A stretch of 29,059 nt of DNA from Macrostomum lignano. Its lineage: Eukaryota. Both the position numbers and the translations under genes were made by a program. Below the pieces are notes generated by a model. That model was given only the letters and a program-made list of their open reading frames with translations. It was not told the DNA's origin and made no database searches. The stretch is taken from assembly GCA_002269645.1 (NCBI GenBank), contig NIVC01004995.1, positions 1 to 29,059 of the forward strand. The letters run 5' to 3'. Positions 1 through 29,059 of this stretch are shown here, piece after piece; positions within the stretch are counted from its first letter, which is position 1, and each line of letters opens with the position of its first letter.

Positions 1-338
1 AATAAACCTTACTGGCCTCGGGCAGACAGCCTTGAAAAGCCCAGCAAAAATGCGGGATAGCGCTTTGCAATAAATGACCGCACGCTGAGTTGTACGCTTG
101 CCCAACTATCTAGAGATGAAAACTACATGTATCTAGAGGAAAATGTGTTTCAGTGAACACAGAAAACTGAACGAGTGGGTGGGCCAAAAGATTGCGATGC
201 AATTACATGTATCATTTACATGTACATGCAGTCTTAGTGAGCGCTGCATGATGAATGGGGAAGAAATTTCTAGCAAGATAAGGACGGAGAGGTACAAGTA
301 CGAGCGTACATGTACGGAGAGTGGAAATAGAGAAGAGT

Positions 339-890
339 GGAGAGGGAGAAGGGTGGAGAGGGAGAAGGGTGGAGAGGGAAAAGGGTGGAGAGGGAGAAGG
401 GTGGAGAGGGAGATGGGTGGGAGGGAGATGGGTGGAGAGGGAGAAGGGTGGAGAGGGAGAAGGGTGGGAGGGAGATGGGTGGAGAGGGAGAAGGTTGGAG
501 AGGGAGAAGGGTGGAGAAGGAGAAGGGTGGAGAGGGAGAAGGGTGGAGAGGGAGATGGGTGGAGAGGGAGAAGGGTGGAGAGGGAGATGGGTGGAGAGGG
601 AGAAGGGTGGAGAGGGAGATGGGTGGAGAGGGAGAAGGGTGGAGAGGGAGAAGGGTGGAGAGGAAGAAGGGTGGAGAGGAAGATGGGTGGAGAGGGAGAA
701 GGGTGGAGAGGGAGAAGGGTGGAGAGGGAGAAGGGTGGAGAGGGAGATGGGTGGGAGGAGAAGGGTGGAGAGGAAGAAGGTTGGAGAGGGAGAAGGGTAG
801 AGAAGGAGAAGGGTTGAGAGGGAGATGGGTTGAGAGGGAGAAGGGTGAAGAGGGAGATGGGTGGGAGGATGATGGGAAGGTGGAAAAGGG
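339..890 (+). repeat. Purine/G-rich 16-bp minisatellite (GGAGAGGGAGAAGGGT / GGAGAGGGAGATGGGT)
   Basis: About 30 tandem, partly degenerate copies are visible directly. The overlapping ORFs on both strands (133-976) are translations of this repeat. Confidence 0.95.
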
Positions 891-4604: not shown

Positions 4605-4922
<318 letters not shown>

Positions 4923-5473
4923 CATGCATACATAAATACATACATACATACATACATACATGCATACATACATACATGCATACATACATACATACATACA
5001 TATATACATACATACATACATACATACATGCATACATACATACATACATGCATACATACATACATACATACATACATACATACATACATACATACATACA
5101 TACATGCATACATACATACATGCATACATACATACATACATACATGCATACGCTCGTACATACATGCATACATACATACATGCATACATACATACATACG
5201 AGTACATACATACATACGTACATACATACATACATACATGCATACATACATACATACATACATACATACATGCATACATACATACATACATACGAGTACA
5301 TACATACATACGTACATACATACATACATACATGCATACATACATACATACATACATACATACATACATACATGCATACATACATACATACATACGAGTA
5401 CATACATACATACGTACATACATACATACATACATGCATACATACATGCATACATATGTAGGTAGGTAGGTAC
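4923..5473 (+). repeat. (CATA)n microsatellite with CATG/CGAGTA variants, ending in a short (GTAG)n
   Basis: Directly abuts the GATA array. The variant block CATACGAGTACATACATACATACGTA recurs three times (~5195, ~5290, ~5390). Confidence 0.97.
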
Positions 5474-6425
5474 GAGTAGTAAGTGGAAGTCTGGAGTCTG
5501 TTAACCCCGAAATCCCACAGTCAGAAAGTGAGAGAGCGTGGAGTTTCTTCTCTCCGCTTCTCACTGTCGAAGCGGTGGCTTTTGATCTGTGCCTCAGAAA
5601 AAGTGTCCCATTCAGCGCTAAATTTAGCAGCTCTGCAATCCACCCGGGCGGTCATCAGGGTGATGAATAGCGGAAATGAGTTCACACTGCTTCTGCGATT
5701 CCTGCCAGAATTGCTGGCGGCAGCATTGATAAAGAGAAGCTCACAGAGACCATCTCTTTCTTTCCGTTCTGTTCCAGCCACGTGCTATTGTATTCTCGAT
5801 CAAGCACTTGCTGGAAATTAGGCGAGTAAACTGAATATTTAGGAGTCGCTGTTGACGGGACAATCCCAATCTATTCTCCGACAGGCTCAGAACAATTTTG
5901 AAAACTCATTCAAGAGACCCAACGGGATCTCTTAGTAAACAAGCGCATACCGGCCTCACCTCAATGTCTACTCGCACAAGCTCTGCTTTGAAGCATTGAA
6001 ATGTCAGTCTTAAGTCAGCTGTAGATCCATCAAAGGGAACAGGGGCCTTTGTGTTTGTTCCTTTCTATTCTTCGTTGGCTCGTATTACTTGCGTAATAAT
6101 TACCAAACCTGATTTATGTCTAAACTCGTTTATACTTCTCTGAGTTGGACTCAGCGACAGGTATGTTTACTGTGATTCCTCTATACATGTAGGCTTTTCT
6201 GCTATTGAGCGCAAGATTTTTTTGTAGGCTTCACATTCCTGAGTGCGTGAGGTTCAAGGCACAAAAATAATTCCTCTATTCAGTTCAGCTACGCTTCTGC
6301 AAGTTTGAAACGGAATACAATTACCAGCGCATCTCCTGGACAAATCGATCTTGTGTACTCAGCTCCCTGCAGTCATTGTCGCTAACCCCACGGATTGATT
6401 GGCCAGCCCCATTTCACCCTATTGA

Positions 6426-9400
6426 ACTCGGCCTTTAGCCAGTGCACCAAGCTCAAGCATAGTAAGAGGGAGCGAGACAGAGAGTAGACAAGCGGAGATC
6501 GCCAGGACCCTCCCTTCTCCCAGCTGGCTCTCAGTGAGTCGCCAGGTCGCAGCCATTCTGAGCGTACCTTTGCTAAGGGGCCACGACGAGAGCGGTCCCC
6601 AGGCGCCGGGCCTGCAAACCGGCTCAGCTATTTTCAGAGACCGCACCCGCGGCTCCTCCGTCTCCGGATTGCCATCTGCGTCCTCGCCGGGGTCTGCAGC
6701 GCTCGGCGGACGGCCCGGTCGGTCGTGGTCGGCCGCAGTCGGCGGAAGCAGCGGAATCGGTGGCGGTGGAGTCGGCGAAGAGGACTGGGAGGTGCGGATC
6801 GGTCGACCAAAGGATCAGTCGGTGGGATTCTTTGCCGCCAACGAGAGCAGCCTCGGGGGCGCCGGTGGTGGAGGCGGTGGCTTTGATGACAGCGACGAAG
6901 AAGAACGCTTGGTGAAGGCAAGTGCTTGTACATGTACTGCTTTACTATTCCTTGGAGTCGATTTAGTGCATGCGAGTTAAACGACTATTCCAAATGCTCA
7001 TATGTAAGTGTGGATTTTCCAAACCATTTCCTGGGATATCATTATTATGCTGTACATAGATGTTGATACTTCCTATAGCTTACATTGCATACATGAGTCT
7101 TAAGTATTGTAACAGTTTATGTAAATTGACGTCATTTGCTGTACAGTCAGCACTCCGATGCAAAAAATACGCTACATATGTGCTTTTTAAAGAAGCTTTC
7201 TGTATTAGTCTTGGAATACACACACAAGGAGCACTGTAGTGCATTACAGGATGTAAAACTCAATGATCGAGTAATTTTTTGAAGGCCACTTTCTTGGAAA
7301 AATACACTGTGGAGATAGGAAAAAATTATCTTCACATAATCTCTTATTGAGTTATACCACAGTGGTCTTTGTCAGTTGTCGCAAGACCAGGTTTCTTCGG
7401 GTAGGTACAGTAGTATAGCTTGTCATGTTCCTCGCAACTGGCTCACTACTTCATCCGCCCTTACGTTCTTCAGCGCCAGGTGTACATCTGCGTAGTATTC
7501 ATGAAGATCGGCGAGATAGACACCATCAAGGAGCAGTTCGCAGCGGATGTTCTAATCAAGGCCAAGTGGCGGGAGCCCGACCTGGACCACAAAAACATCC
7601 AACAGGGCAGGCTGGTGAGAAGCGAGCCTTTCTTCGAAAATCTTAGTACAGAACACAGTAAAGTTGAAGCGCAAGAGGTGCAAAAGTAGTCTTCAAAATG
7701 AAACGCTTCCCAGTTGAACTTTCCTAAAAATACTATTTTATTTGAGTCAAAACGATTTTTACTCAGTTCAACCTGCGGATGCCTTCTAGCCTAGCTAGAC
7801 GCTTTTTTTCCCAATCCCAATCCTAATCTCGAAATCCGAAAAATCTACAGAGCTACACACCAAATTAGGCCATGATTAGTCAGGATGGAATATGCTATGA
7901 AATGGCATAAATCGATCAGATTTCCATTTCTGACACACAAGTCGCTGGGATCGCCTCGACTAAAATCGCAAATCACGCAATCTAATTTGGCTTTGCGTGC
8001 AGCAAAGCCAATTTTCAGAGCTGCCGTGGGTGAGGCGAAATTATAACAAAAAATTCGCGTAAACAGTTTCTAATCGATAAACTCTCGCTGGTTGCATAGC
8101 TTATAAGCTTTAAATGAATTTATTCAATCAGACAGTGGTAAAAAATTTTTACTTTGAATTTCAACATCATATACTGTTCTCAACATTCTAGGACTACGAC
8201 TGGTCAAAAAGTTGGACCCCGAAGCTGTACATTGAGAACACTATCGGAGAAGGCAAGGAGCAGGTCTACCAGATGATTTCATTCAATGAAGTTGGTCACG
8301 CCTTCCTATTTGAAAAGCGGCGCGTCTCGGGTGTTTTCCTGGAAAATCTGGAGCTCAACCACTTCCCGTTTGATGTTCAGGTAAATGCATGAAGCCAGCA
8401 CGATGGCTTGTTGGCCGAATAAGAGCTTTTGCATGAAATCGACGGGATCGTTATCTCTCTGAAAGGCTGTGCGACTTTTTAAAATCTGCTCACACGCCTA
8501 CTCGGGGAGTATCCTAATATTTGCGAGGCAAACGCACGAGTCCGTGTGTTCTTAAGACGTTCTGTGCCCTGTTTCTGTGAAGGTGGATATAAAAGATGCG
8601 ATGAATCCGTGTACCCATTACCCTCCCATTGGCATGATATCCGGGCTGGATGCTGCCTAGATGGAATGCTAGCTGAGTGAGCAGCAGAGTACTCCAACCC
8701 TCAAGTAAAAGAGCAGATGAGAAGTGGCATTAGCAACCTTACATGTATTTCTGGCAAGAACAACTAGAGATGGATAGTGGACAGTGGAAATGCATTTCTT
8801 AGGTTCATTGTATGCATTTAAATTCAATGTGACACAAAATTTGCGCAAATAGAATAGAAAATGAGCTTTCACTACAGTTATAGACAAAAATCATGCTGAC
8901 CTACTTAAAGTATAATCAGTAGTTTTTTATATCTTCAAGGACCTGACAATAACGGTGGCATCAAATCTGTCCTCAGCCGAGATTCGCCTGGTCAACGATC
9001 CCGACGAGCCCCACCGGATTAACAAACAGTCGTTTGTTGGTGAGGAATTAAAACTCAATGAATTAATTCTTCGTTGACTTCCGCTATAAAAAGCCGCTGA
9101 AATTGAATAGTTAGCATTATAATTTCTGTTTGAAATTTACAACTAAGGATATAAACCAGATAAACCCGGAAATTTTTTTGACTACGAACGAAATATTCAT
9201 CAGTCTTTTAAAAATTCCACTAAGGTCTAACAAAGCTAAAAAACACTGAACTTCTCTAATCAACGCCTTAGACGAACAGGAGTGGTTTTTGTACAAGCAC
9301 ATCGACACGGAGCAGCGAGAGCTGGCCTGCGAGTACGCGGACCAGAGCTCCACCCGGCCTGCGCTGTCCGTGAAGTGTCGCGCCGCTCGAAGACCAGCTT

Positions 9401-11433
9401 ATTTTATCTGGAATATTTTCCTCGTCACGGTGAGTAGAAGTGCTCCTTCTACTTTTGCTTCAAGTGCTTACCCTCTGACACTACATACAAATTCCATATT
9501 TGTATGAAGTTCAACCACTATTGAGTTCAGACTGAAGAAAATATTGAGTTATTTTACAGGTCCATTTTGTTGCGCAAAAAGTGTAAGCCCACAACTGTTC
9601 GATATGTTTTTATTTAATTATATTGCTTGATACTTTTCAATCCATTAACTTCGTTAAAATTCAGTGATGAAAATGAAAAGTTTCGTGTCGCTTATTCATT
9701 TGCAACTGAAACGTACCTGTCATCATTAAATTTTGCTTGATTCGGAGTAGGACTCACATGTTAATTGGCAAGCTCGTATACCACAATACAACTACTACAA
9801 TTGTTGCCAAACTTACCTTACCAATGCCTTCTATCAACGCCAACAGTTCCTCATCTGCTCCTTGTCGTTGGTAACCTTCGCAGTGAAGAGGGACCTGCCG
9901 CAGAACCGATTGCAGCTGACGTTCACATTGGTGCTCACGCTGGTAGCATTCAAGTTTGTGGTGAACCAATGCTTGCCAAAGATTTCTTATCTCACGTATC
10001 TGGTAAGTTTTTTCGTGCACAGATAGCTCATAGCATCTAACAAGCTTTGAGATACGTGTTACATTATTGTGTGAAGCTTGGTGCAATTGTATTGTTGTAT
10101 AATATAATAATAATTGATTATACCTGCCCTAATGGGCACATGTGCAACCGACAACTCAGCCGCAGCTATTGCGCGGCGCATCTAAGGCTACACACGGCTG
10201 TTCAGTGCAAGTACTGGGGGGTCGCCACACACCCTCAATTACCCCAGCTAATGCTGGCACCCATTTTATAACTGGGTGAACTGAAGCAATGCATGCAGAG
10301 TTACAGGTAAGTGTCTTGCTTGAGGGCACAAATTGTTTCGAGGGGATCGAGAATCGAACCCCCGACCTTTTAGTCGTGAGCCCGATGCTCTAAAACCCCT
10401 CATGTTGCATAAAATGTGAATGTTGTGCTACGATTATTGCAAGTACAAGCCTTATAGGAAATGTCAATAGCAACAGAAAGCAATTTAAAACTGCAGGACA
10501 AGTACGTGATCAGCAGCCTGTTCATTCTGACGCTAATCTGTCTGTGGCACGGCCTAATTGTGGTCATTGACAAGATCATCCTCGAACAGTTTGGCATGGT
10601 GTGGGACAGTCTGGAAACTTACGTAATCATTGGCATGGCATTCAGCTATGTGGCCTACAACGTTGGCTTTGTCATCATGATTTTTTGCGTGGTAAGCTCG
10701 CACGGTGGAGCGGTCTTGTCACTGGAATGTACTAAGTAAAATAGAATAATGTGCTCAAAGCTGGAAGCCTAAAAATACTACCTAAATAAAGTCGTTCGTT
10801 TAAATTCGATGAAAAACAATATAACACTTTACAGGCCTGCAAGAGGCGACGAATAATGAAGCAGAAGGACAAGGAATACACGGTGAGCAAGCCTCAATAC
10901 GATATTGCACCTACCAGCGCCTAAAGTGCTAAGTTGGGCAGCTTTTACGAGCGTAACTTTTTAAAAGACAAACTCTGTCAATTTTACAATTTTACAGTCG
11001 TCCTCTTTTACAATCTAAATTTGCCCTCATAGTTTAGCACAAACAATACAATAGTTTTGCATAAAAATGTTTAATGATTTAACTTTGTACTCGTAATTAA
11101 TGTCTACTTCCTCCATATCCGGTTTGATCGCAAGAGGCTCCAATGCAGAAGTTCCGATTAAACGGTCCCCAGCTTGCTAACTCGTAGCTTGCTGGTTATA
11201 ATGCAGAGAAGATATTCTCCCTTTTTATATCGCTTTAAGCACCAGGTGAAGACTTTTCAGCGCTATCAAAAAGTAATGTAGACTCGCAATAGCTAACAAA
11301 ACTATATTTTCAGGAGCGAGTGAAAATGCAGGTGCGGTCCAAGGGAATGCGAACTAAACGGATGCTACAACAGACTCAGCTGCTACACGAGGACAAGGAG
11401 AATGGGCAGTCCACGGCGGTTGCGTTCATTTGA
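6426..11433 (+). CDS. Pentameric ligand-gated ion channel subunit, Cys-less (Pro-loop) type; multi-exon; 5' end unresolved
   Basis: Phase-consistent exons: [open frame from 6426, true start unknown]-6917 (or 6911), 7474-7614, 8192-8380, 8940-9039, 9272-9429, 9847-10002, 10497-10691, 10835-10882, 11314-11433 (TGA). Motifs: EIDTIKEQFAADVLIKAKWREP (beta1-2), WTPKLYIEN (loop A), ELNHFPFDVQDL (Pro-loop), pre-M1 ARRPAY, four hydrophobic helices, M2-M3 LPKISYLTYLDKY. Exons 7474-11433 give 368 aa. Confidence 0.9.
10100..10400 (-). mobile_element. tRNA-derived CORE-type SINE in an intron of the channel gene
   Basis: The minus strand reads a degenerate A-box (TTTTAGAGCATCGG), then B-box GGTTCGATTC (10360-10351), then a CORE-like segment GTGCCCTCAAGCAAGACACTTACC...CAGTTCACCCAGTTATAAAATGGGTGCC, and ends in an (ATT)n-like tail near 10105-10115. 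Confidence 0.7.
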
Positions 11434-13080: not shown

Positions 13081-16000
13081 TTACTGTGAACCAGAGTTTC
13101 CCTTAGTAGCCAGGTAAGGCCTCTGTTCCGTTGGACAGTTCACCCGGTCGTTCAAGACCCAGTCGGTTCGCTTCTTACCAACGGGTTCCAGCTGAAAGCG
13201 TGTAGATGAAGTTGAATGACGCTTGATGCTTCGACTGACATACTTAGTAGGAAGCTAATAGTTGATTTTGGAGACTCATTAATGAATGAAATTCAAACAA
13301 TTGATGAATATAAATATCTCGATGCGACGACTCGACTCATGGAGATAACTTGAATCTCACCATGGTATTCCAAAGAGCCAGTCCGCCAAGCGCATGTCCT
13401 TTGTCGCTCAGGTGGAAGCAGTCGGGCGCAAAGTAGGCCATGTCCGGCTCTCCCTGCCGTGGATTTTTAGGGTAGAAAGAAGTTTCATTCATGAACGAAT
13501 GGTTTACAACAATACCTATTGGACTTATTGGAGCAAATACGCTCATATTGGATTTGTTATTCTTTGTATCTGACGATGATGCATCTGCTTGTGCTTGATT
13601 GAGAAATTATTTTACGCTTTTACGAGTACTCCTGCTGTAACAAACCTTTCATGTATTAAGAAAAATATCGTTGCTTCACTCGAAGTAATCATCTCAAATC
13701 TTTAAAAAACATCAAACTTATGTTTGGTTAAATCCTTTAAATCTGTACCAAGGATGTCTGCCTTAGCCAATTGTTTGTACCACACATTCAAACTAAAAAA
13801 CATGCCCTGACGCACATTCGGTAGAGTAGGTGGGGTAATTTCGCGAAGGAAGGGCTGCAGAACAACAGTGAAGTCGGACTTTCGAGTCCATTTGGGATCT
13901 TCAGCAATCCTCCTGGCACGCCGCTGAAGCTCCATCGAGTACTCATAGACCTCCTCTTTGGACAATGTGGAACCGCATTTGCACCAGAAAGTCCTGCGCG
14001 TTTGTTTGCGAGTGTAATGTACATAGATTAGTTGCCATTATACATCAATTAAAGCTTAGTGCTTTAGTGCTAAGCTACAGATATTAAAAAAACTGCATGA
14101 GTTGTGCATTACTGGAAATTTCATTCCCAATGCCCTGCCCAAATACAAACTGAAAACAGTGCAATTTACTCACTGAAGCAAAGCTTTGCAGACAAGACTC
14201 TGATCCTTCAGATCATTAACTGCTGCCACATCCATCATCTCAATGAGATTGACAAACGCTCGAGGCACATTGTCGTACAGGTAATCCAAAGCAGTTCTAA
14301 TGTGCTTCTCATAATTTTCTACAGAGAATCTGCTGGGATCCTTGCAGTGGTCGCAGACGTCGTTGCCTCCGATGAAGAGGTTAATTAGCTTCCAATCGGT
14401 CTCGAATGCCACCTTTTTGTCCTTTTTCATCTTTTCCACCAGTTGTCTGGCTTGGCGAGGCATATCTCTGGAGTACAGAAATTAAAACAAAGTTAAAACA
14501 GTTAAAACAATTGGAACTGCTGATCCTAATAACTATACGAAGTCGATTTAATTAAGTCGATTCCGATCCTTGCCAATGAAGTCATGCACATTCACAGTTT
14601 ATCTAACACGATCTAAAAATTTCTATAAGGCCCATCAAAATCGACTCAGTCGGGATTTTAAACACATAGTCGATAGCAACAGGCTTACTCAGCTCTGTTG
14701 CCCACCACAGCCTCGTTGAAGCCGGCGAAGACGCCGTCCGGGCCACTAATGCCAGTCGAGAAACCGGTGAGTTTTGGGTTGAACTTCTTCAGCACGGCTG
14801 AAATGGTGCGGAACGATTTCTTAATTGGTAACAGCAAAGCATAGACATGTGTATTTTTTGCTTGTTAGATGCCAGAAATTACATGTAAACTTTACTTCGA
14901 CTGATGTCCTCTTAATAGGGGATCACTAGAAATTATGAGTACTCATACTAGCATCAGGATCGATTTTTATCTCTAATTTTCGAGTTTGCGTTCATTTTCA
15001 TAATTTTACATTGATTTTCCGACTTAACTTGGCATAGTAGTGTGCTGAGACAAGTCTTCTTTGCCGCCCATGGTAAAACTGTGGCCCCGGTATTGCGTAA
15101 AGATGGTGAGCAGATTCTTGGAGTAAATGCCCATGCCAGCGGTGAGAGAGTCGCCGATGGCTCCAACAACATCGATATCAGCTGGCCGCAGTTTGTCAAC
15201 GTTAGTCGGCGGACTGTGGCTGCGAACGACATCGCAGTTAAAAGCGGATCCAGTCTGAATTTTTTACCTTTCATAGTTTTAGCTTTTCTTCGACATTAAA
15301 ATCAACCTGAGCTAGATACATGAGTACGAGTATTTTATCCACTATTATTCATTCAAATTATACGTATCATTTAAAGTACATATAGTTGTCAGCATGCAAC
15401 CGATTCTTTTTAAAAATTAATAAACAGTTAACTGGCAAATATTCAACTTTAGTAAAAAGCCAACTTTCAGTTACTTAGAGCTAAATGAACACTCAATGTT
15501 TTACCGTTGGAACAGCGGCAGTTGCGTGCTTCTCACGGGCGGCGTTCCACTTGCGCTCGTGCTCAATTCTGTGCCGCTTCAGCTTGTCAGAGGCATACAG
15601 TGCGGTCACAGCGCTCTGCAGCACACGCAGATAAGTTTCACCTGTAGTAATGTTGGATTAGCATGTTGAAAATATATGGCTGCTTTTTATGCCATGTTTT
15701 TCGGTTCTAAGACATTTTAGGTGAGAATAGTCATTCAAAAAACTACAATGAATTGTCTTCAGACAGTTATAGCAACTGCGTGACAGTGACTGGATACAAC
15801 TAAGACCGTAATTTTTTAAATTGAATGTGCAGGTAGAAGAACGTAATTTAATCGTTTAATTAAATTTGCTTTGATGCATAATGTCAAAAACGACCCGACA
15901 GAATGCTTGAAGGTCAAAAATCCAGCGCTAGCATCAAGACACCATGGTTTTAGTTCCGGATTTAGGTCCGGATTTTGTACATGGTCACCTGGTGGCATCA

Positions 16001-20518: not shown

Positions 20519-22621
20519 ATGTCTGACTGGCTTGCTTCATCTGGTGTGTCGAACCGTGATGATTTGGTCTACATGGCAAAACTTGCCGAGCAGGCAGAAC
20601 GATATGATGACATGGCAGCTGCTATGAAGTCTGTAACAGAGAAGGGACAAGAGCTTGGAAACGAAGAAAGGAACTTGCTTTCTGTGGCCTACAAGAACGT
20701 CGTTGGTGCCAGGCGTTCTTCATGGAGGGTGATTTCCAGCATTGAGAGCAAGACCGAAGGCCATGAAAGGAAACAGTCCACTGCAAAAGAATATCGTCAG
20801 AAGATTGAAGCTGAACTTCAAAAAGTATGCAAGGAAGTATTGGTAAGTAGGCCCATAGAAACGGCATTATGACTATATTCTCTACTTTACTTTTTGCTCA
20901 CATTTAGACCATAAAGTATTAGTTAATGTAATTTTAATTTCTCTTAAAATTAACCATTGCATTGATAATGCTTATGGCATTTTATTAATTTAATAAGTTA
21001 TAAATTATAAAGTAATACATAGTAGATAATTATATTTAATTATGGCTATTATATAAATACTATATATAGTATAGTAATTTTGTATTTATATATAACTAGC
21101 AACTTACTTAGAAAACTGTCAACTATTTTTAGCTTAGTTAGTTCAACCTAGACAGCATCTCATCTTGAAAAAACAAATATCTATTTGAAAGGTATGTTTT
21201 GTTGTATCATTATGATTAATATATTTTTACAAAAGTTTGGCTATTTTGGCGTACCACTTTGGTGTACCACTTTGAGCTTGAGAAATTTTTTGGCATACCA
21301 ATTTTGGAGGAATAAATTCATGCTGTGTATAAAAATTGTAATGTAAATTAACCCTTTTTAGTTTTTATGTAAAATGAAGGAAAATTTGTATAGTCTAAAA
21401 AGTCAGTGATAAACTTTTTGCTTTTTTTATATTAACATTGAATAAAACTTGTGTAAATTATTGCTAAGAATGTAAATATTTGCTTTCTTTTTTCTGTAGG
21501 GTTAAATTAAATTTGTTTAAAATGAAAATATTCGTTATATTTAAAAGAATTTTCATACAAAAGCCTTTAGAAAACTCTACTTGTGAAAACCAAATGACCT
21601 TTTTAGAAGGAATTTTTGGCATACATTTTAGGGATTTTTTTGTTTTTGGCGTACACTGGCATACATTTAGCTGAGATAGGATTTTTGTTCCGGCATACAC
21701 TACTACACAATCCGAACTGTGGTCAGAATCTTGATCATATGTCTGATAATTTCTATTCTATTTAATATTATATCATTATCAAGTAAAATATATATTATAT
21801 ATTAGCCAAAAATAAACCTTTCTCTAGCTAATAAATGTTGTTGTAACTTATATGCTTTATACAAAGAAAATAGACTATATCAAAATCATTTTCCTATCTT
21901 TAAAGACTGAAAAAATAGCCTTTTATAATAAAACAAGTATTATCATTACTATGCATTATATTTAACATTTGTATAACTTATCTATCATTTTCTTTCATTT
22001 TGTAGAATCTGCTTGATGACTTTCTGATCAAGCAAGCTTCTACCCCAGAGTCGAAGGTCTTTTACTACAAGATGAAAGGTGATTATTACCGTTATCTGGC
22101 TGAAGTTGCCACTGGTGATGAGCGCAAGGATGTCATTGACCAGTCTGAGGGTGCCTACAAGGCTGCCACTGAGCATGCTGAGTCTGAGCTGCCAACCACT
22201 CATCCAATTCGGCTTGGCCTGGCCCTCAACTACTCTGTTTTCTTCTATGAAATCAAGAGTGAATCTGACAAGGCCTGCCAGCTGGCAAAGAAGGTAAATG
22301 AGGCTAATATATTAGCAATTTGATTGTCTCCTCAACTAGCTGGCAAGTAGCTAAGCTATTAATCAAACCACTCGTCTGATTTCCAGGCCTTTGACAATGC
22401 AATCGCCGACTTGGATGAAATTGGCGAGGATTCCTACAAGGATTCGACACTCATTATGCAGCTCCTGCGAGACAACCTGACTGTAGGTTTACTCCATCTA
22501 TTATATGGTGTTTTGCTGTACACTTCAGTGTTTTAAATAACCTTATTTGTATTTGAAAACTACTCCATTTTAGCTGTGGACATCTGAGCAAGGCGGAGAA
22601 GACGGAGAGCAGGATCAGTAA
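20519..22621 (+). CDS. 14-3-3zeta: 14-3-3 protein, zeta/beta-type, 251 aa
   Basis: Exons 20519-20842, 22006-22293, 22387-22482, 22574-22621, all phase 0 and GT-AG. Signatures [72 protein letters not shown]. Confidence 0.97.
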
Positions 22622-24774
22622 AGTCTACACACCCAGCTCTGGCCACCAGCAGTACCGACTTATTTACTGTACTAATGACTTGATTAGATTGCATCAGTTG
22701 TCATTCTCAAATTTGTCCTACTCGGTATTAGTATTAATAAAAATTCCTTACTTATCTTACTAATATTATTATTATCGTTTATTCATGCTTTCATGCTTTA
22801 TACGATTCCTTAAATTCATCAACACAAACTAAAATTTAGGTGTTGATTTGTGTTGTGTTTTCGGACAGCACAGATACTATTAGCTATTCATTTTTTATTA
22901 TCTAATCGTTTCTTCTCTGATGAAAAACGAAAACTATAAAATTTAGGATTTATTCGTTATTAGTCAACTATTCGTGTCTGTTGGTAAGGCTTACAATTAG
23001 ACTAACTTTGAATTAATGTATTGATCCGAGAGCGATTTATTGTACATGTCAGCTGGCCAGTTTTTGCGCAAGTGCAGGATTCAAAAGCAGTCATTTTTTG
23101 TTAACTATTGGCTAAAAGCTGCTATTAGGCTTCGAATCTGTAGTTCATCTGATTGATTAGTTTCACGAAATTATGCTTAATTAATCAGTACTATAATACT
23201 GATCTATTTGTCCGTCTCAGCAACTCTGCCATGAAACTTAGTCAAGCTAACAGCGTTGTAATCTGCTGTGATTTTATTAATTTTATTGTGTATTTATTAG
23301 TATGGCACTATTCTGTCAGTATATATAAACGTATACTATATATTATAATGCTATTTCTCAGCAGCAGGGCGCAGGTAACAAAACTGACAAATTGCATAAG
23401 CTCTACATTTTCCACAGTTTGCAAGTTTGCAACTTAAAAAATTAAACTACGAGTGTATGAATACGTGTAGAACTTTCGATAATTTTTGTCTCAATAAAAC
23501 TGCTTTTGGTAATTATTTTTGATTCCTTAAGACTTTGTCCTTTTTATTGCTTTTCTACGAGCATAAAGTGAATTTAAGATCAACGGAAATTATTATAGGC
23601 TGCATGCAAGATAACCCTTTGAAATTGGAGTCTTGGTGAATGTTGTACTTTGAAACCGAGTATTCAGCTCTATTCTTGTTAAAGCTTTCAGTTGAATACT
23701 GTAATGTAGCAGAGGCTCATCACAGAATCTACAAGCAAAGGCGTCGCCATGGATTTCATGGTGGAGAGGGGGCAAAGCCAAGAATTCTACATGTACATGT
23801 ATGACCATTTAAATTTCTACATGTACATTATTTATGGAATCTGTGTCAGCGACCATTTTAGCGACGCAGGTATACTCCCTTTGGCGCCGCAGGTACATGT
23901 ACCAGCTCATTGTGGTGGCGCGCAGGCGCTATGTTTTGTATAGCTGAAGCAAAACTATTGATTTCCATAACGGGTCACAAAGTGGGGTGGGGACAACGCG
24001 GTAGCAGGCCACATCATCTGTGCTTAGCCGTGGCTAACCGCAGACCGTTCTACTGGAGGCTGTTCATTCTGATGTTTCAATTGTACCCTCACCGGCATGC
24101 ACGTGCACTGTGTTTCATGCCAAATGCGTACGTGCACAGACATGAAGTCCTATAATTAAGGAGGATAACTTTCTTATACGAGCGTATTATTGGGTCAGAA
24201 GAGATTGGTAAAAATAGCTCGGAAAATGAAAGAAAATTGCTACAAGTCATGAGTGAATTGCTACTTTATTACTCCATAAATTTAATCACTTATTATCACA
24301 GGAGGAATGTAAGACCGGTTTTGTTGAGCCTAATTTTGTAGCCTTCAACAATTAGAATGTTTCGCAGCTTCGATATGCGCTACTTGCAGTAGAAACTATA
24401 GGACGTATAATGTTTTTTCGTACGAACACAACGCATCCGTTTTCGTATGAGGCTGTGGCGAAAATGTCAGATTAACTCATTTATACGTCAATTTCGCTAA
24501 TCCCTGTTCCATCTTTGCTTTCGTTTTCCGCTAATAACTATTTGAAGAATGATTTCGATTTATACATTACGAGTATATGCTTCGTGTATTGGCTTCTAAG
24601 AACAAAACATCTGAGTGTTACTCATAAATCAGATCCAGAGTCAGATGAATCTGACCTCCAACCCCTCGTTCAATTAAAACGGTTTTTTATTATTTACCTA
24701 AACCACGGGTCGGTAAGCTTTTTTACCTCAAAGCCCAGATAAAGAACCTATAGCGCATAACTGCGAGCCAGAGA

Positions 24775-25968: not shown

Positions 25969-26557
25969 CAGGGGCGTAGCCAGGAATTTTGATTGGGGGG
26001 GGCCCGTGAGTTAGGGTGCGCCAGCTTCTTATAGGGGGGGGCGCCAGTTTCTTTTAGGGGGGGGGCGCCAGTTTCTTTTAGGGGGGAGCGCCAGTTTCTT
26101 TTAGGGAGAGCGCCAGTTTCTTTTAGGGAAGGCGCCAGTTTCTTTTAGGGGGGCGCCAGTTTCTTTTAGGAGGGGGGGGCGCCAGTTTCTTTTAGGGGGG
26201 GCGCCAGTTTTTTTTAGGGGGCGCCAGTTTCTTATAGGGGGCGCCAGTTTCTTTTAGGAGGGGGGGCGCCAGTTTCTTTTACCGGGGGGGGCGCTAGTTT
26301 CTTTTAGGGGGGCGCCAGTTTCTTTTAGGAGGGGGGGCGCCAGTTTCTTTTAGGGGGGCGCCAGTTTTTTTTAGGGGGCGCCAGTTTCTTATAGGGGGCG
26401 CCAGTTTCTTTTAGGAGGGGGGCGCCAGTTTCTTTTACCGGGGGGGCGCTAGTTTCTTTTAGGGGGGGCGCCAGTTTCTTTTAGGGGGGGCGCCAAGGCC
26501 AGAGTTGGTGATTATGGGGGGCCACGGACCCCCTTGCCCCCTCTGGCTACGCCCCTG
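25969..26557. mobile_element. Non-autonomous hAT-type element (MITE), 589 bp, with internal minisatellite
   Basis: Perfect 15-bp TIRs CAGGGGCGTAGCCAG (25969-25983) and CTGGCTACGCCCCTG (26543-26557). Perfect 8-bp TSD CCAAGGAC (25961-25968 and 26558-26565). An 8-bp TSD is characteristic of hAT. Confidence 0.9.
26013..26495 (+). repeat. G(n)CGCCAGTTTCTTTTA minisatellite, about 22 copies of 20-27 bp
   Basis: Counted directly. Variant order in units 7-13 is repeated in units 14-20. Confidence 0.95.
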
Positions 26558-26645: not shown

Positions 26646-28052
26646 CAGGGGCCAATTTCATAAAGAAGCTACAAATGACACGTGACGAGCGTCAACGATT
26701 TTGGTCTCATAAATATGGGATCTTTATACGAGTATTAACGGCGCCCTCTGAATTTCCCATTAACGCCCTTGAAGCAGGGTATTACTATTATTGTGCCATA
26801 GACATTTGTGTCCTTGACAAAGTGGGACAAAATTAGCGGGCAGTTAATGATATTAACTGCCCGCTAATTTGCATTAGAGTAAGTTTGAAATAGACAATCT
26901 GGCGTTAAACGTCATTAACTGCCCGCTAATTTGCATTAAAGTAAGTGTGACTCCTGCAAGCGGGCTTAAATGTAGTCTATTGCATTAAAAGGCAAGAATA
27001 AGTGGCCAGCGGGCACAAAGGTCATGGTACAATGATATTAACTGCCCGCTAATTTGCATTAGAGTAAGTTTGAAATAGACAATCGGGCGTTAAATGTCAA
27101 AACGGCGTGTTAAACGGCGCCCTCTGATTTTCCCATTAACGCCCTTAAAGCATGGGTATTAATGTACTATTAACTGCCCGCTAATTTGCATTAAAGAAGT
27201 GTGACTCCTGCAAGCGGGCTTAAATGTAGTTTATGGCATTAAAAGGCAAGATTAAGTGCCCAGCGGGCACAAAGGTCATGGTACAATATTATTGTGCCAT
27301 AGACATTTGTGTCCTTGACAAAGTGGGACAGAATAATCGGGCGTTAAATGTCATTAACTGCCCGCTAATTTGCATTAAAGTAATACATGTACGTGGCATT
27401 ATATTTTAAACCACTTTAAAGCTCACTTTCAGGGAGGTTATTGACATAGATTTTATTTTGCAGGATTTAATCGATCACTTTCCTGGACATATTGCAAGGA
27501 TTATTGTATGTATCTAAATAAGCGAGCTTCTCTCTTCTCTTCCTTCGTGACTCGAGAAATTTCTTAATGAAATTTTGTCTATGTTAAGAATGTGGGGGCT
27601 TCGCCTCCACACCCCCATCCCCAACTTCAACCATAGACATACAAGTATGGCTCCGGGATTTATCTGAATGCATCCCGCAAAATTAAAGTAGTTTAAATAA
27701 GATATTCTATGTGATTAAATACTGGTAGAAGTTAAATGAAATACCGACCTCAAACCCATAGAATATCTTATACATATTAGGAAGGCAATACTGAAAGCTA
27801 CAAGTGTGGCCAGCCGCGACTTGTCAAAGCACATGACAAGAGGAAGTATTTTAACACAAAGGCGTCCATTTTAGTGCATGTCTATGGAACAAACCCCTGA
27901 AAAAGCGCTTATAATTTGTTAAATTTCGCTTGCCACCTGTCACTTGTCGAATTGTCAAGTTGGACCCGTTTTTTATGAAACGCATTATTTTGCAGAATTG
28001 CCACTTTTCACTTGTAATTCGTCCGACAAGTGCTTTATGAAATGGGCCCCTG
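26646..28052. mobile_element. Putative non-autonomous DNA transposon, PIF/Harbinger-like ends
   Basis: CAGGGGCCAATTTCATAAAG (26646-26665) matches the reverse complement of CTTTATGAAATGGGCCCCTG (28033-28052) at 19/20 positions, with weaker subterminal similarity beyond. No clean identical TSD, so the two ends could belong to different copies. Confidence 0.55.
26738..27385 (+). repeat. Mosaic of shuffled 50-120 bp modules anchored on TTAACTGCCCGCTAATTTGCATTA (5 copies), plus a 19-bp hairpin
   Basis: Core copies with ATTTGCAT at 26867, 26929, 27052, 27184 and 27368. Inverted arms 26830-26848 and 26852-26870. Confidence 0.9.
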
Positions 28053-28786
28053 AAGTCTAATAAATAAATTGCTATAGAACTCCAGCATTCGAGTGCAAAT
28101 TCATATGGACTTTATGAGATCATGTGATTCGGCAGTTGTACCAATATATCATTGCATTAATATATCATACCGGAGAACAGTGATTGACAGTTGAGCAAGC
28201 CTTAGAGAGGGGATTAATGCTTCTCAGTGATGCATACATCTTTCGTAATATCTGAAAGTTGCTGGTACACTATGTGCGCTGAATGGCGAAAAAAATTCAA
28301 AGACAATTCAATTGTCTGTCAAAATTTTGCTGCGAGCATTTTCTAGATGAATTTATCGTTCCAATAGGTTGAATAGCTAGACTGTTGAAAATGTATTCAG
28401 CGACAGTGAATCTCTTCAATAGCTTCTCGGGCACCGAGTGGCACGCTATTATGCACTGCATGCTTCTCGGCTAGAAGGCCTGAAGCCAGTACGAACCACG
28501 GTCCAATCAGGCGTCTCCAACCAAGTCAGGCGCCCAAAATTCACCGTTACAAGTGGCCCAGCATCTCTGCTCCCGCTCACCCCCTGCGCCTGACTCTGTC
28601 ACTGTTCTCCAGGCAAACTGTTGCTGACGGAATCTTGCCCTTCAAGTTCGGTACTTTCTGACAGCACGACGGTAAGTTTTGGCTTGATTTCATTCGAGTG
28701 ACCTGATCATATTTCTTTGCGTCGGATCCATTCCTTCCGAAGTTAGAACTTGTGCTCTTATTGCACTGCCAGAAATGATAAGATAG

Positions 28787-29059
28787 AATTGGTCTGACAG
28801 AATTGGTTTGACAGAATTTGTCTCACAGAATTGGTCCGACAGAATTGGTCTGACAGAATTGGTCTGACAGAATTGGTCTGACAGAATTGGTCCGACAGAA
28901 TCAGTTTGACAAAACCGGTCTGACAGAATCGGTCAGACAGAACCGGTCTGACAGAATCGGTCTGACAGAATCAGTTTGACAAAACCGGTCTGACAGAATC
29001 GGTCAGACAGACCGGTCTGACAGACGAAGGTCAGAACTGACAGAATCGGTCAGACAGAA
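28787..29059 (+). repeat. 14-bp minisatellite GACAGAATTGGTCT running off the window end
   Basis: About 19 degenerate tandem copies are visible. Confidence 0.93.

What the first reader, a model, noticed from the sequence alone, without database searches (positions are those of the whole stretch)
7474..11433. Intact Cys-less pentameric ligand-gated channel gene
Seen: eight downstream exons splice in frame with no stops. The Cys-loop position reads E-N-L-E-L-N-H-F-P-F-D-V-Q-D-L (across the 8380/8940 junction), so the C-x13-C cysteines are replaced by E and L while FPFD-Q is retained. The M3-M4 loop is very short (about DKIILEQFGMVWDSLET). Established: animal nicotinic, GABA-A, glycine and 5-HT3 subunits have the disulfide, while prokaryotic GLIC/ELIC and some protist and invertebrate members lack it. 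Inference: this is an orphan metazoan Pro-loop receptor with an unknown gating ligand. The ORF track shows only fragments of it.
Basis: partly seen in the sequence, partly recalled or inferred. Interest (0 to 1): 0.72.

Follow-up and report, generated by a model that had tools for sequence, protein, structure and literature searches.

The report
Flatworm Cys-less pentameric channel gene
This is a real, conserved gene for a member of the already published "Cys-less" branch of the nicotinic/GABA-receptor channel superfamily; what is unusual is that the whole branch carries sequence signals suggesting its ligand-binding domain may face the inside of the cell.

Summary
Eight + strand exons (7474-11433), all with AG/GT borders, splice into a 368-codon frame that ends at a stop. 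Every exon is matched by orthologues, and all seven intron positions are shared with a tapeworm orthologue. Amino acids are conserved although synonymous sites are saturated.

The product passes Pfam Neur_chan_LBD and folds (AlphaFold2 pLDDT 90) as a complete pentameric-channel subunit. The two Cys-loop cysteines are Glu and Leu, as in all 121 relatives aligned, and FPFD-Q is kept. M3 and M4 form a tight hairpin.

The gene belongs to the spiralian "Cys-less" clade described in 2016 and 2023, whose function is still unknown. "Intact" is not fully shown, because no start codon or first exon could be assigned.

New here is a family-wide pattern:
- About 97% of models have no signal-peptide-like segment.
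- The Lys/Arg bias is reversed: 12.5 on the ligand-domain side against 3.3, in 113 of 113 members.
- A conserved polybasic helix follows M4.
- Glycosylation sequons are enriched only in long M3-M4 loops.

Together these predict a cytoplasmic ligand-binding domain. That is untested; I give it about 45%.

The parts
7474..7614 (+). Coding exon, residues 1-47: strands beta1 and beta2, including the conserved K-I-G-E-I-D-T-I-K-E beta1-beta2 loop (7504-7533). It starts at an acceptor (ttcttcag|CGC), phase 0, and is not the first coding exon.
8192..8380 (+). Coding exon, residues 48-110: the W-x-P...N motif, the core of the beta-sandwich, and the Pro loop up to F-P-F-D-V-Q. It is 189 nt, the same size as the Sparganum exon.
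8342..8945 (+). The Pro loop (the position of the Cys loop), E98...L112, split by the 8381-8939 intron. Cys1 is replaced by Glu and Cys2 by Leu.
8940..9039 (+). Coding exon, residues 111-143 (ends in phase 1): the loop B region, which has no conserved aromatic residue, and the start of the conserved F-V-D-E-Q-E-W motif.
9272..9429 (+). Coding exon, residues 144-196: beta9, the variable loop C, beta10, the pre-M1 segment C-R-A-A-R-R-P (9376-9396) and the start of M1.
9847..10002 (+). Coding exon, residues 197-248: the end of M1, the M1-M2 loop (KRDLPQN), the pore helix M2 (R0' to Q20' at 9907-9969, with Q2', T6', L9', A13', F16') and most of the M2-M3 loop.
10497..10691 (+). Coding exon, residues 249-313: M3 (10503-10568), the short acidic M3-M4 hairpin (10569-10619) and M4.
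10835..10882 (+). Coding exon, residues 314-329: the end of M4 and the conserved post-M4 polybasic motif C-K-R-R-R-I-M-K-Q-K-D-K-E-Y (10838-10879).
11314..11433 (+). Last coding exon, residues 330-368 plus TGA: the rest of the basic C-terminal helix (predicted helix 316-358).
6426..6911 (+). Uncertain. This GC-rich stretch is open in the frame that would join exon 7474, using the donor TTG|GTGAAG at 6911 or AAG|GCAAGT at 6917. It has no ATG in that frame, and no ATG in any frame from 6426 to 6885. It may be an upstream exon or 5'UTR.
6116..6160 (+). Uncertain. The only ATG-started mini-exon upstream with a good phase-0 donor (MSKLVYTSLSWTQRQ, CAG|GTATGT). It is a candidate initiator exon with no supporting evidence.

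Best explanation
Window 7474-11433 holds the eight 3' coding exons of a functional gene, kept by selection, for a subunit of the spiralian (flatworm, mollusc, annelid, nemertean, brachiopod, rotifer) "Cys-less" pentameric ligand-gated ion channel family.

**Shown.**
- The protein has the complete pLGIC subunit fold: an N-terminal beta-sandwich, then M1 to M4.
- The coupling elements that define the superfamily are conserved: the beta1-beta2 loop (GEIDT), the Pro loop (FPFD-Q), the pre-M1 Arg-Arg-Pro and the M2-M3 loop (P-K-I-S-Y-L-T-Y-L-D-K).
- M2 is ELIC-like, with R0', Q2', T6', the L9' gate and F16'.

**Inferred.**
- Five subunits form a channel, and a conformational change in the beta-sandwich domain opens it through that interface.
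- The activating ligand and the ion selectivity cannot be read from the sequence. The -2'/-1' positions are Q-N, neither the cationic G-E-K nor the anionic P-A-R signature.
- The classical pocket loops B and C are not conserved. The conserved residues are acidic clusters at the domain interface, so an ion (H+ or a divalent cation) or another non-classical agonist is as likely as a transmitter.

**Family-specific additions.**
- A 4-residue M3-M4 turn.
- A conserved polybasic helix that continues M4.

**Orientation.** Which side of the membrane the beta-sandwich faces is unresolved. Every sequence signal I could compute favours the cytoplasmic side (see the novel case).
For: **Gene and selection.**
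- In-frame exon chain with canonical splice sites; per-exon orthologue support.
- Seven intron positions shared with the Sparganum locus.
- dN 0.178 with dS saturated, and 157 of 261 identical-residue codons differ.

**Fold and family.**
- Pfam Neur_chan_LBD above its cut-off.
- 246 homologues, best 75-77% identical in cestodes and a monogenean.
- ELIC is the best PDB sequence match and M2 aligns residue by residue.
- AlphaFold2 pLDDT 90.4, pTM 0.82, with beta-sandwich 1-183, helices at 185-208, 214-238, 247-276 and 281-314, and an extra helix 316-358.
- Foldseek TM-score 0.60-0.72 to GABA-A, glycine-receptor and sTeLIC chains.

**Conservation.**
- Invariant and near-invariant positions.
- M2 column frequencies: R0' 99%, L9' 99%, N-1' 65%, Q-2' 59%.

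**Clade membership.**
- The profile search finds 803 representatives at E<1e-30, including S. mansoni A0A5K4EMP5.
- The clade is described in PMC4795631 and PMC9874803.
Against: - There is no transcript evidence, and no start codon or first exon was identified in the window.
- Pfam Neur_chan_memb is below its cut-off (22.5 against 28.1 bits), so the membrane part rests on the structure prediction and on homology.
- Pentamer formation, conduction and gating were not and could not be tested here.
- No member of the clade has a published ligand or current.
Confidence: 0.9

Rival explanations
1. **Canonical orientation.** The beta-sandwich is extracellular, as in every characterised pLGIC. The channel is a plasma-membrane receptor for an external transmitter, ion or pH. 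The basic post-M4 helix lies outside the cell, for example as a "latch" beside the very acidic Pro loop.
For: - All solved and characterised relatives have this orientation (established knowledge; the hits are all such receptors).
- RNAi of planarian relatives gives seizure-like movements and sensory defects, which fits a neuronal receptor (as cited in PMC9874803).
- Some flatworm paralogues have long M3-M4 loops that end in a charged helix just before M4, like the cytoplasmic MA helix of nicotinic and 5-HT3 receptors.
- The Pro loop has up to six acidic residues that could pair with the basic tail.
Against: - 215 of 222 Met-started models have no signal-peptide-like hydrophobic segment, and 24 have fewer than 15 residues before beta1. 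Hydrophilic N-terminal extensions reach 913 residues.
- Lys+Arg counts are 12.5 on the beta-sandwich side against 3.3 on the other, in 113/113 members.
- The N-flank of M1 is more positive in 240/249 and the C-flank of M4 in 208/225.
- No disulfide pair is conserved in the domain: there is one conserved Cys.
- There is no sequon enrichment in the domain.
- The tail helix keeps pLDDT 93-95 without the beta-sandwich, so packing on that domain is not what makes it confident.
Confidence: 0.5
2. **Inverted orientation.** After loss of the signal peptide, M1 inserts as a type II signal anchor. The beta-sandwich, the N-terminal extension and the post-M4 helix are then cytoplasmic, and the M1-M2 and M3-M4 loops are external or luminal. 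The channel would be gated from the cytoplasmic side.
For: The evidence is, summarised under the novel case.
Against: - There is no precedent in the superfamily.
- The evidence is statistical and rests partly on automatic gene models.
- No dedicated signal-peptide or topology predictor was available.
- The window's own N-terminus is unknown.
Confidence: 0.45
3. **Secondary loss.** The gene is a canonical anionic or cationic Cys-loop receptor that lost its cysteines recently, like nematode lgc-34 or the Dirofilaria subunit.
For: Such "secondary Cys-less" genes exist (PMC4795631, PMC9874803).
Against: - E and L at the two positions are fixed across about 260 relatives from six phyla.
- The best PDB match is ELIC, not a Cys-loop receptor.
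- No second (loop C) cysteine pair is conserved.
- The family profile retrieves the published primary Cys-less schistosome gene.
Confidence: 0.03
4. **Pseudogene or prediction artefact.** The frame is open by chance, or the gene is dead.
For: No initiator exon was found.
Against: - 368 codons are open across eight exons.
- Residues are conserved although synonymous sites are saturated.
- Intron positions are shared with the orthologue.
- All functional motifs are intact.
Confidence: 0.03

Closest known systems
Metazoan "Cys-less Pro-loop receptors" (Jaiteh, Taly and Henin 2016, PMC4795631), including the Schistosoma Cys-less LGICs (Johnson et al. 2023, PMC9874803; e.g. UniProt A0A5K4EMP5)
   Same: - No cysteines flank the F/YPxD loop, and there is no second Cys loop.
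- The pLGIC fold is retained.
- The taxa are spiralian.
- A0A5K4EMP5 is retrieved by the profile built around the window protein at E = 3e-155.
   Different: - The window gene is a different orthogroup: about 47% identical to the Paragonimus and Echinococcus paralogues, against 80-86% to cestode and monogenean orthologues.
- It has Q at M2 -2', where the schistosome genes have the Glu stressed by Johnson et al..
- It has a 17-residue rather than a 100-170-residue M3-M4 segment.
ELIC (Erwinia/Dickeya chrysanthemi pLGIC; PDB 2VL0, 2YN6 and others)
   Same: - It is the best solved-structure sequence match (E = 2e-17 over residues 4-261).
- It lacks the disulfide, with a polar and a hydrophobic residue at the two positions.
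- M2 is nearly superimposable (R-L-Q-x-x-F-T-L-x-L-T-x-V-A-x-x-F).
- The M3-M4 link is short.
   Different: - ELIC is bacterial and has Glu at -1'; from established knowledge, it carries a signal sequence and has an aromatic amine-binding pocket.
- The window gene is an eight-intron animal gene with no conserved loop B or loop C aromatic residues, N at -1' and a 54-residue basic post-M4 tail that ELIC lacks.
Canonical metazoan Cys-loop receptors (glycine, GABA-A, nicotinic, 5-HT3)
   Same: The overall subunit fold (Foldseek TM-score 0.60-0.72 over about 320-340 columns), the 9' Leu gate, the pre-M1 Arg and the FPxD-Q motif.
   Different: - There is no C-x13-C disulfide.
- Relatives have no signal peptide.
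- There is no long cytoplasmic M3-M4 loop.
- The Lys/Arg sidedness is opposite.
Nematode "secondary" Cys-less subunits (Dirofilaria immitis Q70GM3, C. elegans lgc-34)
   Same: They lack the first Cys-loop cysteines.
   Different: According to PMC4795631 and PMC9874803, these sit inside the anionic Cys-loop clade and keep the second Cys loop. The window protein does neither.
Post-M4 "latch" helix of the alpha-7 nicotinic receptor (recalled from memory, not tested)
   Same: A helix follows M4 on the ligand-domain side.
   Different: Here the helix is about 43 residues long and strongly basic, with a conserved [KR][KR]RR-x-M-x-x-K-D-[KR]-E-Y motif. It is predicted with equal confidence without the ligand domain.

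Membership tests
pLGIC / Pro-loop receptor superfamily | N-terminal beta-sandwich ligand-binding domain (Pfam Neur_chan_LBD) | tested here: met
   39.1 bits against a cut-off of 26. The AlphaFold2 model has strands over residues 2-183, and Foldseek matches pLGIC chains.
pLGIC / Pro-loop receptor superfamily | Four transmembrane helices M1-M4 after the domain | tested here: met
   Helices at 185-208, 214-238, 247-276 and 281-314 with pLDDT of about 85-97, and structural alignment over 320-340 columns. Pfam Neur_chan_memb alone is below its cut-off, 22.5 against 28.1.
pLGIC / Pro-loop receptor superfamily | Invariant proline in the beta6-beta7 loop (F/Y-P-x-D) | tested here: met
   F105-P106-F107-D108; P, D and Q are invariant in 121/121 and P in 129/129 aligned representatives.
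pLGIC / Pro-loop receptor superfamily | M2 pore helix with a hydrophobic 9' gate | tested here: met
   L9' 99%, R0' 99%, T6' 77%.
pLGIC / Pro-loop receptor superfamily | Pentameric assembly and ligand-gated conduction | not testable with these tools
   Only monomer prediction was available, and there is no electrophysiology.
Canonical metazoan Cys-loop receptors | C-x13-C disulfide flanking the loop | tested here: not met
   E98 and L112; E in 121/121 and L/I in 121/121.
Canonical metazoan Cys-loop receptors | Cleavable N-terminal signal peptide | tested here: inconclusive
   The window's first exon is unknown. In relatives, 215/222 Met-started models lack an h-region like those of four canonical yardsticks. 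The criterion is crude; SignalP was not available.
Canonical metazoan Cys-loop receptors | Long Lys/Arg-rich cytoplasmic M3-M4 loop | tested here: not met
   A 17-residue acidic segment with a 4-residue turn in the model. The family mean is 12.6 residues with 1.5 Lys+Arg.
Metazoan Cys-less clade (Jaiteh 2016; Johnson 2023) | No flanking cysteines, with F/YPxD retained | tested here: met
Metazoan Cys-less clade (Jaiteh 2016; Johnson 2023) | No second (loop C) Cys loop | tested here: met
   The only Cys conserved in the domain is C179 (114/121). C164 of the window is not conserved.
Metazoan Cys-less clade (Jaiteh 2016; Johnson 2023) | Groups with published members rather than with Cys-loop subfamilies | tested here: met
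   The profile retrieves S. mansoni A0A5K4EMP5 at 3e-155. ELIC outranks the glycine receptor in the PDB search. No formal tree was built.
Metazoan Cys-less clade (Jaiteh 2016; Johnson 2023) | Acidic residue at M2 -1'/-2' (described as frequent, not defining) | tested here: not met
   The window has Q-2' and N-1'. In the family, E-2' is 17% and D-1' 7%.

The most novel reading that the evidence does not exclude
The spiralian Cys-less pLGICs, this gene included, may sit in the membrane upside-down relative to every known pLGIC. The beta-sandwich "extracellular" domain, the N-terminal extension and the basic post-M4 helix would be cytoplasmic. The tiny M3-M4 turn, or the long glycosylated loop of some paralogues, would face outside or into a lumen. 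The channel would then be opened by an intracellular ligand or ion. The missing disulfide would simply reflect a reducing compartment.

1. 215/222 Met-started relatives have no signal-peptide-like segment. 24 start fewer than 15 residues before beta1, and others carry hydrophilic extensions of up to 913 residues with no Pfam domain.
2. Lys+Arg is 12.5 on the domain side against 3.3, in 113/113 members, whereas a canonical subunit gives 3 against 16.
3. Charge differences across M1 (N-flank more positive in 240/249) and M4 (C-flank more positive in 208/225) both predict N-in and C-in.
4. N-x-S/T sequons are enriched only in long M3-M4 loops (44 observed against 24.8 expected, z = 4.45). They are not enriched in the beta-sandwich domain (0.89 times expectation). 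Three of those loops, from related flatworm paralogues, also carry a Cys pair just before M4.
5. Only one Cys is conserved in the domain.
6. A juxtamembrane Cys plus a polybasic helix after M4 is the usual look of a cytoplasmic membrane-proximal segment.

I found no paper that raises this.
Probability: 0.45. Interest if true: 0.88.

Novelty: new member of a known kind. Interest (0 to 1): 0.58.

Why it matters
**As a gene.** It adds one more orthologue to a clade that has been catalogued since 2016, but for which no ligand, ion selectivity, localisation or current has been published. Papers up to 2026 still call its function unknown. The clade is absent from vertebrates and from the common model organisms, and it has been proposed as an anthelmintic target.

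**The topology signals.** These would matter well beyond this gene. If the ligand-binding domain is cytoplasmic, this would be the first pLGIC gated from inside the cell. It would give a simple reason for the missing disulfide. It would also explain any failure of bath-applied ligand screens, because the agonist would have to be applied to the cytoplasmic face. The open question of what these channels do then becomes directly testable.

Tried and rejected
1. **Start codon.** The frame-compatible ORF 6426-6911 has no ATG. The ATG at 6886 is out of phase with both possible donors. The only ATG mini-exon with a strong phase-0 donor is 6116-6160, and nothing supports it. The Sparganum model has a single 88-residue first exon 36 kb upstream, so the true first exon may lie outside the window.
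2. **Second pLGIC gene downstream.** Two paralogues hit 23961-24077 weakly (E = 5e-4 and 5e-3), but 118 other family members do not. I treat this as chance.
3. **tRNA-derived element in intron 5** (about 10340-10370). ARAGORN and Rfam find nothing, even at E up to 1, and there is no second copy in the window.
4. **Domains in the long N-terminal extensions.** I looked for cytoplasmic-type domains that would settle the orientation and found none.
5. **Does the tail helix pack on the ligand domain?** A second AlphaFold2 run on M1-M4 plus the tail alone kept tail pLDDT at 93-95, and M4 plus tail became one continuous helix. The "latch on the domain" idea therefore gets no support from confidence values.
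6. **PDB search with M3-M4-tail alone.** It gave only non-significant matches (E from 0.14), to cytoplasmic juxtamembrane segments of GPCRs. This is a resemblance, not evidence.
7. **Literature.** Searches for any statement on topology, signal peptide or ligand of the clade found none.
8. **Source species.** It was not determined. The protein is closest to a monogenean (86% in the domain), then to cestodes (80-82%).

Full report
**Observation.** The eight + strand exons are 7474-7614, 8192-8380, 8940-9039, 9272-9429, 9847-10002, 10497-10691, 10835-10882 and 11314-11433. All have AG acceptors and GT donors. They join into 1107 nt, 368 codons and a TGA, with no internal stop, while both other frames are full of stops. 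The segment DKIILEQFGMVWDSLET lies between M3 and M4. The bacterial-style ORF list shows only fragments, such as 10461-10739.

**Is it a real gene?**
- Each exon is matched separately by orthologous proteins in tblastn, with E from 1e-30 to 1e-2 and 80-84% identity for the large exons.
- In the Sparganum proliferum locus that encodes the closest full-length relative (L001, gene span 61 kb), the exon ends fall at the same alignment positions as all seven window exon ends. One exon has the identical 189-nt size.
- Over 340 aligned codons, dN is 0.178 while dS is saturated. 157 of the 261 codons that encode the same residue differ in sequence. That indicates strong purifying selection.
- The 5' end is not resolved. 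7474 is an acceptor in phase 0, and the conserved beta1 strand begins there, so at least one upstream coding exon is required.
- The stretch 6426-6911 is open in the right frame with two usable donors, but it has no ATG. There is in fact no ATG in any frame between 6426 and 6885. The only ATG mini-exon with a strong phase-0 donor is 6116-6160. "Intact" is therefore shown for the 368-residue core only.

**What it is.**
- Pfam Neur_chan_LBD is above its curated cut-off (39.1 against 26 bits). Neur_chan_memb is just below (22.5 against 28.1).
- AlphaFold2, run with a 69-sequence alignment, gives pLDDT 90.4 and pTM 0.82. It predicts a beta-sandwich over 1-183, helices at 185-208, 214-238, 247-276 and 281-314, and an extra helix 316-358.
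- Foldseek aligns 320-340 columns to GABA-A, glycine-receptor, sTeLIC and DeCLIC chains at TM-score 0.60-0.72.
- By sequence, the best solved structure is bacterial ELIC (2e-17), ahead of glycine and GABA-A receptors (about 1e-11). M2 aligns almost residue for residue.
- The database search gives 246 homologues. The best are 75-77% identical, in cestodes and a monogenean. [quoted passage not shown]
- A profile search of 1.84 billion cluster representatives finds 803 at E<1e-30.
- The two cysteine positions are E (121/121) and L/I (121/121). F, P, D and Q of the loop are invariant, and the pattern holds in 139 more divergent representatives.

**Known or new?** It is known as a kind.
- Jaiteh, Taly and Henin (PMC4795631) described a metazoan Cys-less clade dominated by Lophotrochozoa and including Platyhelminthes.
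- Johnson et al. (PMC9874803) described the schistosome members. One of the proteins they name, A0A5K4EMP5, is hit by my profile at 3e-155.
- Papers from 2025-2026 use the clade as an outgroup and state that its function is unknown.
- The only functional hint is planarian RNAi, which gave seizure-like movement and sensory defects (cited in PMC9874803).
- The window gene is a distinct orthogroup within the clade. Over the ligand domain and M1 (window residues 1-200) it is 86% identical to a monogenean, 80-82% to cestodes and about 47% to the Paragonimus and Echinococcus paralogues. This also suggests that the window comes from a neodermatan-like flatworm. The species was not determined.

**Anatomy and likely mechanism.**
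- Invariant and near-invariant positions cluster in the beta-sandwich core and at the interface with the membrane domain. These are K11-G13-E14-I15-T17-K19-E20 (beta1-beta2), E98/E101/F105/P106/D108/Q110/D111 (Pro loop), F142-D144-Q146-E147-W148, C179-A181-R183-R184-P185 (pre-M1) and P240-I242-S243-Y244-L245-T246-D249-K250 (M2-M3).
- No position is at least 90% conserved in the loop B region (116-123) or the loop C region (151-178). The classical aromatic agonist pocket is therefore not a conserved feature. This is inference from conservation only.
- M2 has R0' (99%), Q2', T6', L9' (99%), A/T13' and F16'. The -2'/-1' positions are Q/N in most members, neither G-E-K nor P-A-R, so selectivity cannot be assigned.
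- I infer a pentameric channel that is gated through the usual domain interface by an unknown stimulus. An ion (H+ or a divalent cation) acting on the conserved acidic clusters is as plausible as a transmitter.

**The unexpected part: every topogenic signal points the wrong way.**
24 have fewer than 15 residues before beta1, for example rotifer MVT|VELRVVFLKIGEIDT. Others have hydrophilic extensions of up to 913 residues without any Pfam domain or transmembrane-like segment.
2. *Reversed charge bias.* Lys+Arg counts are 3.9 (pre-M1), 1.8 (M1-M2), 2.0 (M2-M3), 1.5 (M3-M4) and 6.6 (first 15 residues after M4). That is 12.5 on the ligand-domain side against 3.3 on the other, in 113 of 113 members. 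The same count on a canonical muscle alpha-1 subunit gives 3 against 16.
3. *Flank charges.* The N-flank of M1 is more positive than its C-flank in 240/249 members. The C-flank of M4 is more positive in 208/225.
4. *Conserved tail.* The post-M4 motif x-[KR]-[KR]-R-R-x-M-x-x-K-D-[KR]-E-Y is conserved (R318 97%, M321 86%, D325 88%) and is often preceded by a juxtamembrane Cys.
5. *No disulfide pair.* Only one Cys (C179) is conserved in the domain.
6. *Sequons.* N-x-S/T sequons are at or below shuffled expectation in the domain (0.89x), the N-terminal extension (1.06x) and the tail (0.86x). They are 1.78-fold enriched (44 against 24.8, z = 4.45) in the 21 long M3-M4 loops of paralogues. Three of those loops, from related flatworm paralogues, also carry a Cys pair just before M4.

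By the standard rules (positive-inside, charge difference across the first signal anchor, no translocation of large folded N-domains without a leader), these signals predict N-in and C-in, that is, a cytoplasmic ligand-binding domain.

**Arguments against inversion.**
- There is no precedent in the superfamily.
- Many N-termini come from automatic gene models.
- The loops in the sequon test are few and related to each other.
- The charged helix before M4 in some paralogues resembles the cytoplasmic MA helix of nicotinic and 5-HT3 receptors.

I found no paper that discusses the point. I rate inversion at about 0.45 and the canonical orientation at about 0.5.

**The tail helix.** In the full-length model, residues 316-358 are helical with pLDDT 89-97. 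In a model of M1-M4 plus the tail alone, the tail keeps pLDDT 93-95 and is continuous with M4. Its confidence therefore does not depend on the ligand domain.

**Rejected alternatives.**
- Secondary loss of the cysteines within a canonical subfamily is contradicted.
- A pseudogene is contradicted.
- Bacterial contamination or recent horizontal transfer is contradicted by the seven spliceosomal introns shared with a tapeworm.

**Verdict.** The gene is a new member of a known kind. The added value of this re-examination is the family-wide prediction of reversed membrane orientation. It is testable with routine tagging and glycosylation-scanning experiments and with inside-out patches.

Noticed in passing
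window 6426-6885: A GC-rich stretch (about 53% GC) just upstream of the first confirmed exon. It has no ATG in any of the three + strand frames over 460 nt, where about 6 would be expected (my rough estimate from base composition). It is open in the frame that would splice into 7474. It could be a 5'UTR or upstream exon of the channel gene.
   Followed up: partly
window 20519-20869 (+): An ATG-started ORF that encodes the N-terminal 117 residues of a 14-3-3 protein (Pfam 14-3-3, 119.9 bits). This is probably the first exon of a neighbouring gene.
   Followed up: partly
window 14173-14463 (-): An ORF fragment with a GDSL-like lipase/acylhydrolase match (Pfam PF00657, 39.5 bits). This is an exon of a minus-strand neighbour between the channel gene and the 14-3-3 gene.
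   Followed up: partly
window 330-868, 1472-2573, 4606-5456, 26014-26495, 28785-29024: Five tandem arrays: a G-rich 16-mer x34 with strong GC skew; a 20/42/336-nt nested array of about 1.1 kb; (ATAC)n of about 850 nt; a 22-mer x21; and a 14-mer x17 at the window end.
   Followed up: no
window 21001-22000: A sharply AT-rich kilobase (GC 0.24, against about 0.40-0.45 elsewhere), just downstream of the 14-3-3 exon.
   Followed up: no
window 26786-27033 vs 27169-27383: Two segments of about 100-120 nt are each repeated within about 500 nt, on the same strand, at 92-96% identity: 26914-27033 with 27169-27287, and 26786-26882 with 27287-27383. They are not part of the tandem arrays.
   Followed up: no
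window 23961-24077 (+): A weak tblastn match (E = 5e-4 and 5e-3) of two flatworm paralogues' pre-M1/M1 region. 118 other family members do not hit it, so it is probably chance rather than a second channel gene.
   Followed up: yes
window 10340-10370 (intron 5): A motif that looks like a tRNA T-arm (GGGGATCGAGAATCGAACCCCCGACC). ARAGORN and Rfam find no tRNA or related family, and there is no other copy in the window.
   Followed up: yes
related proteins P0125, P0126, P0227 (flatworm paralogues; P0126 is S. mansoni A0A5K4EMP5): Their M3-M4 loops of 100-170 residues are rich in Ser, Thr and Asn, carry 5-8 N-x-S/T sequons, and end in a Cys pair 7-8 residues apart just before M4. This looks like an extracellular, glycosylated segment rather than a cytoplasmic loop.
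   Followed up: partly
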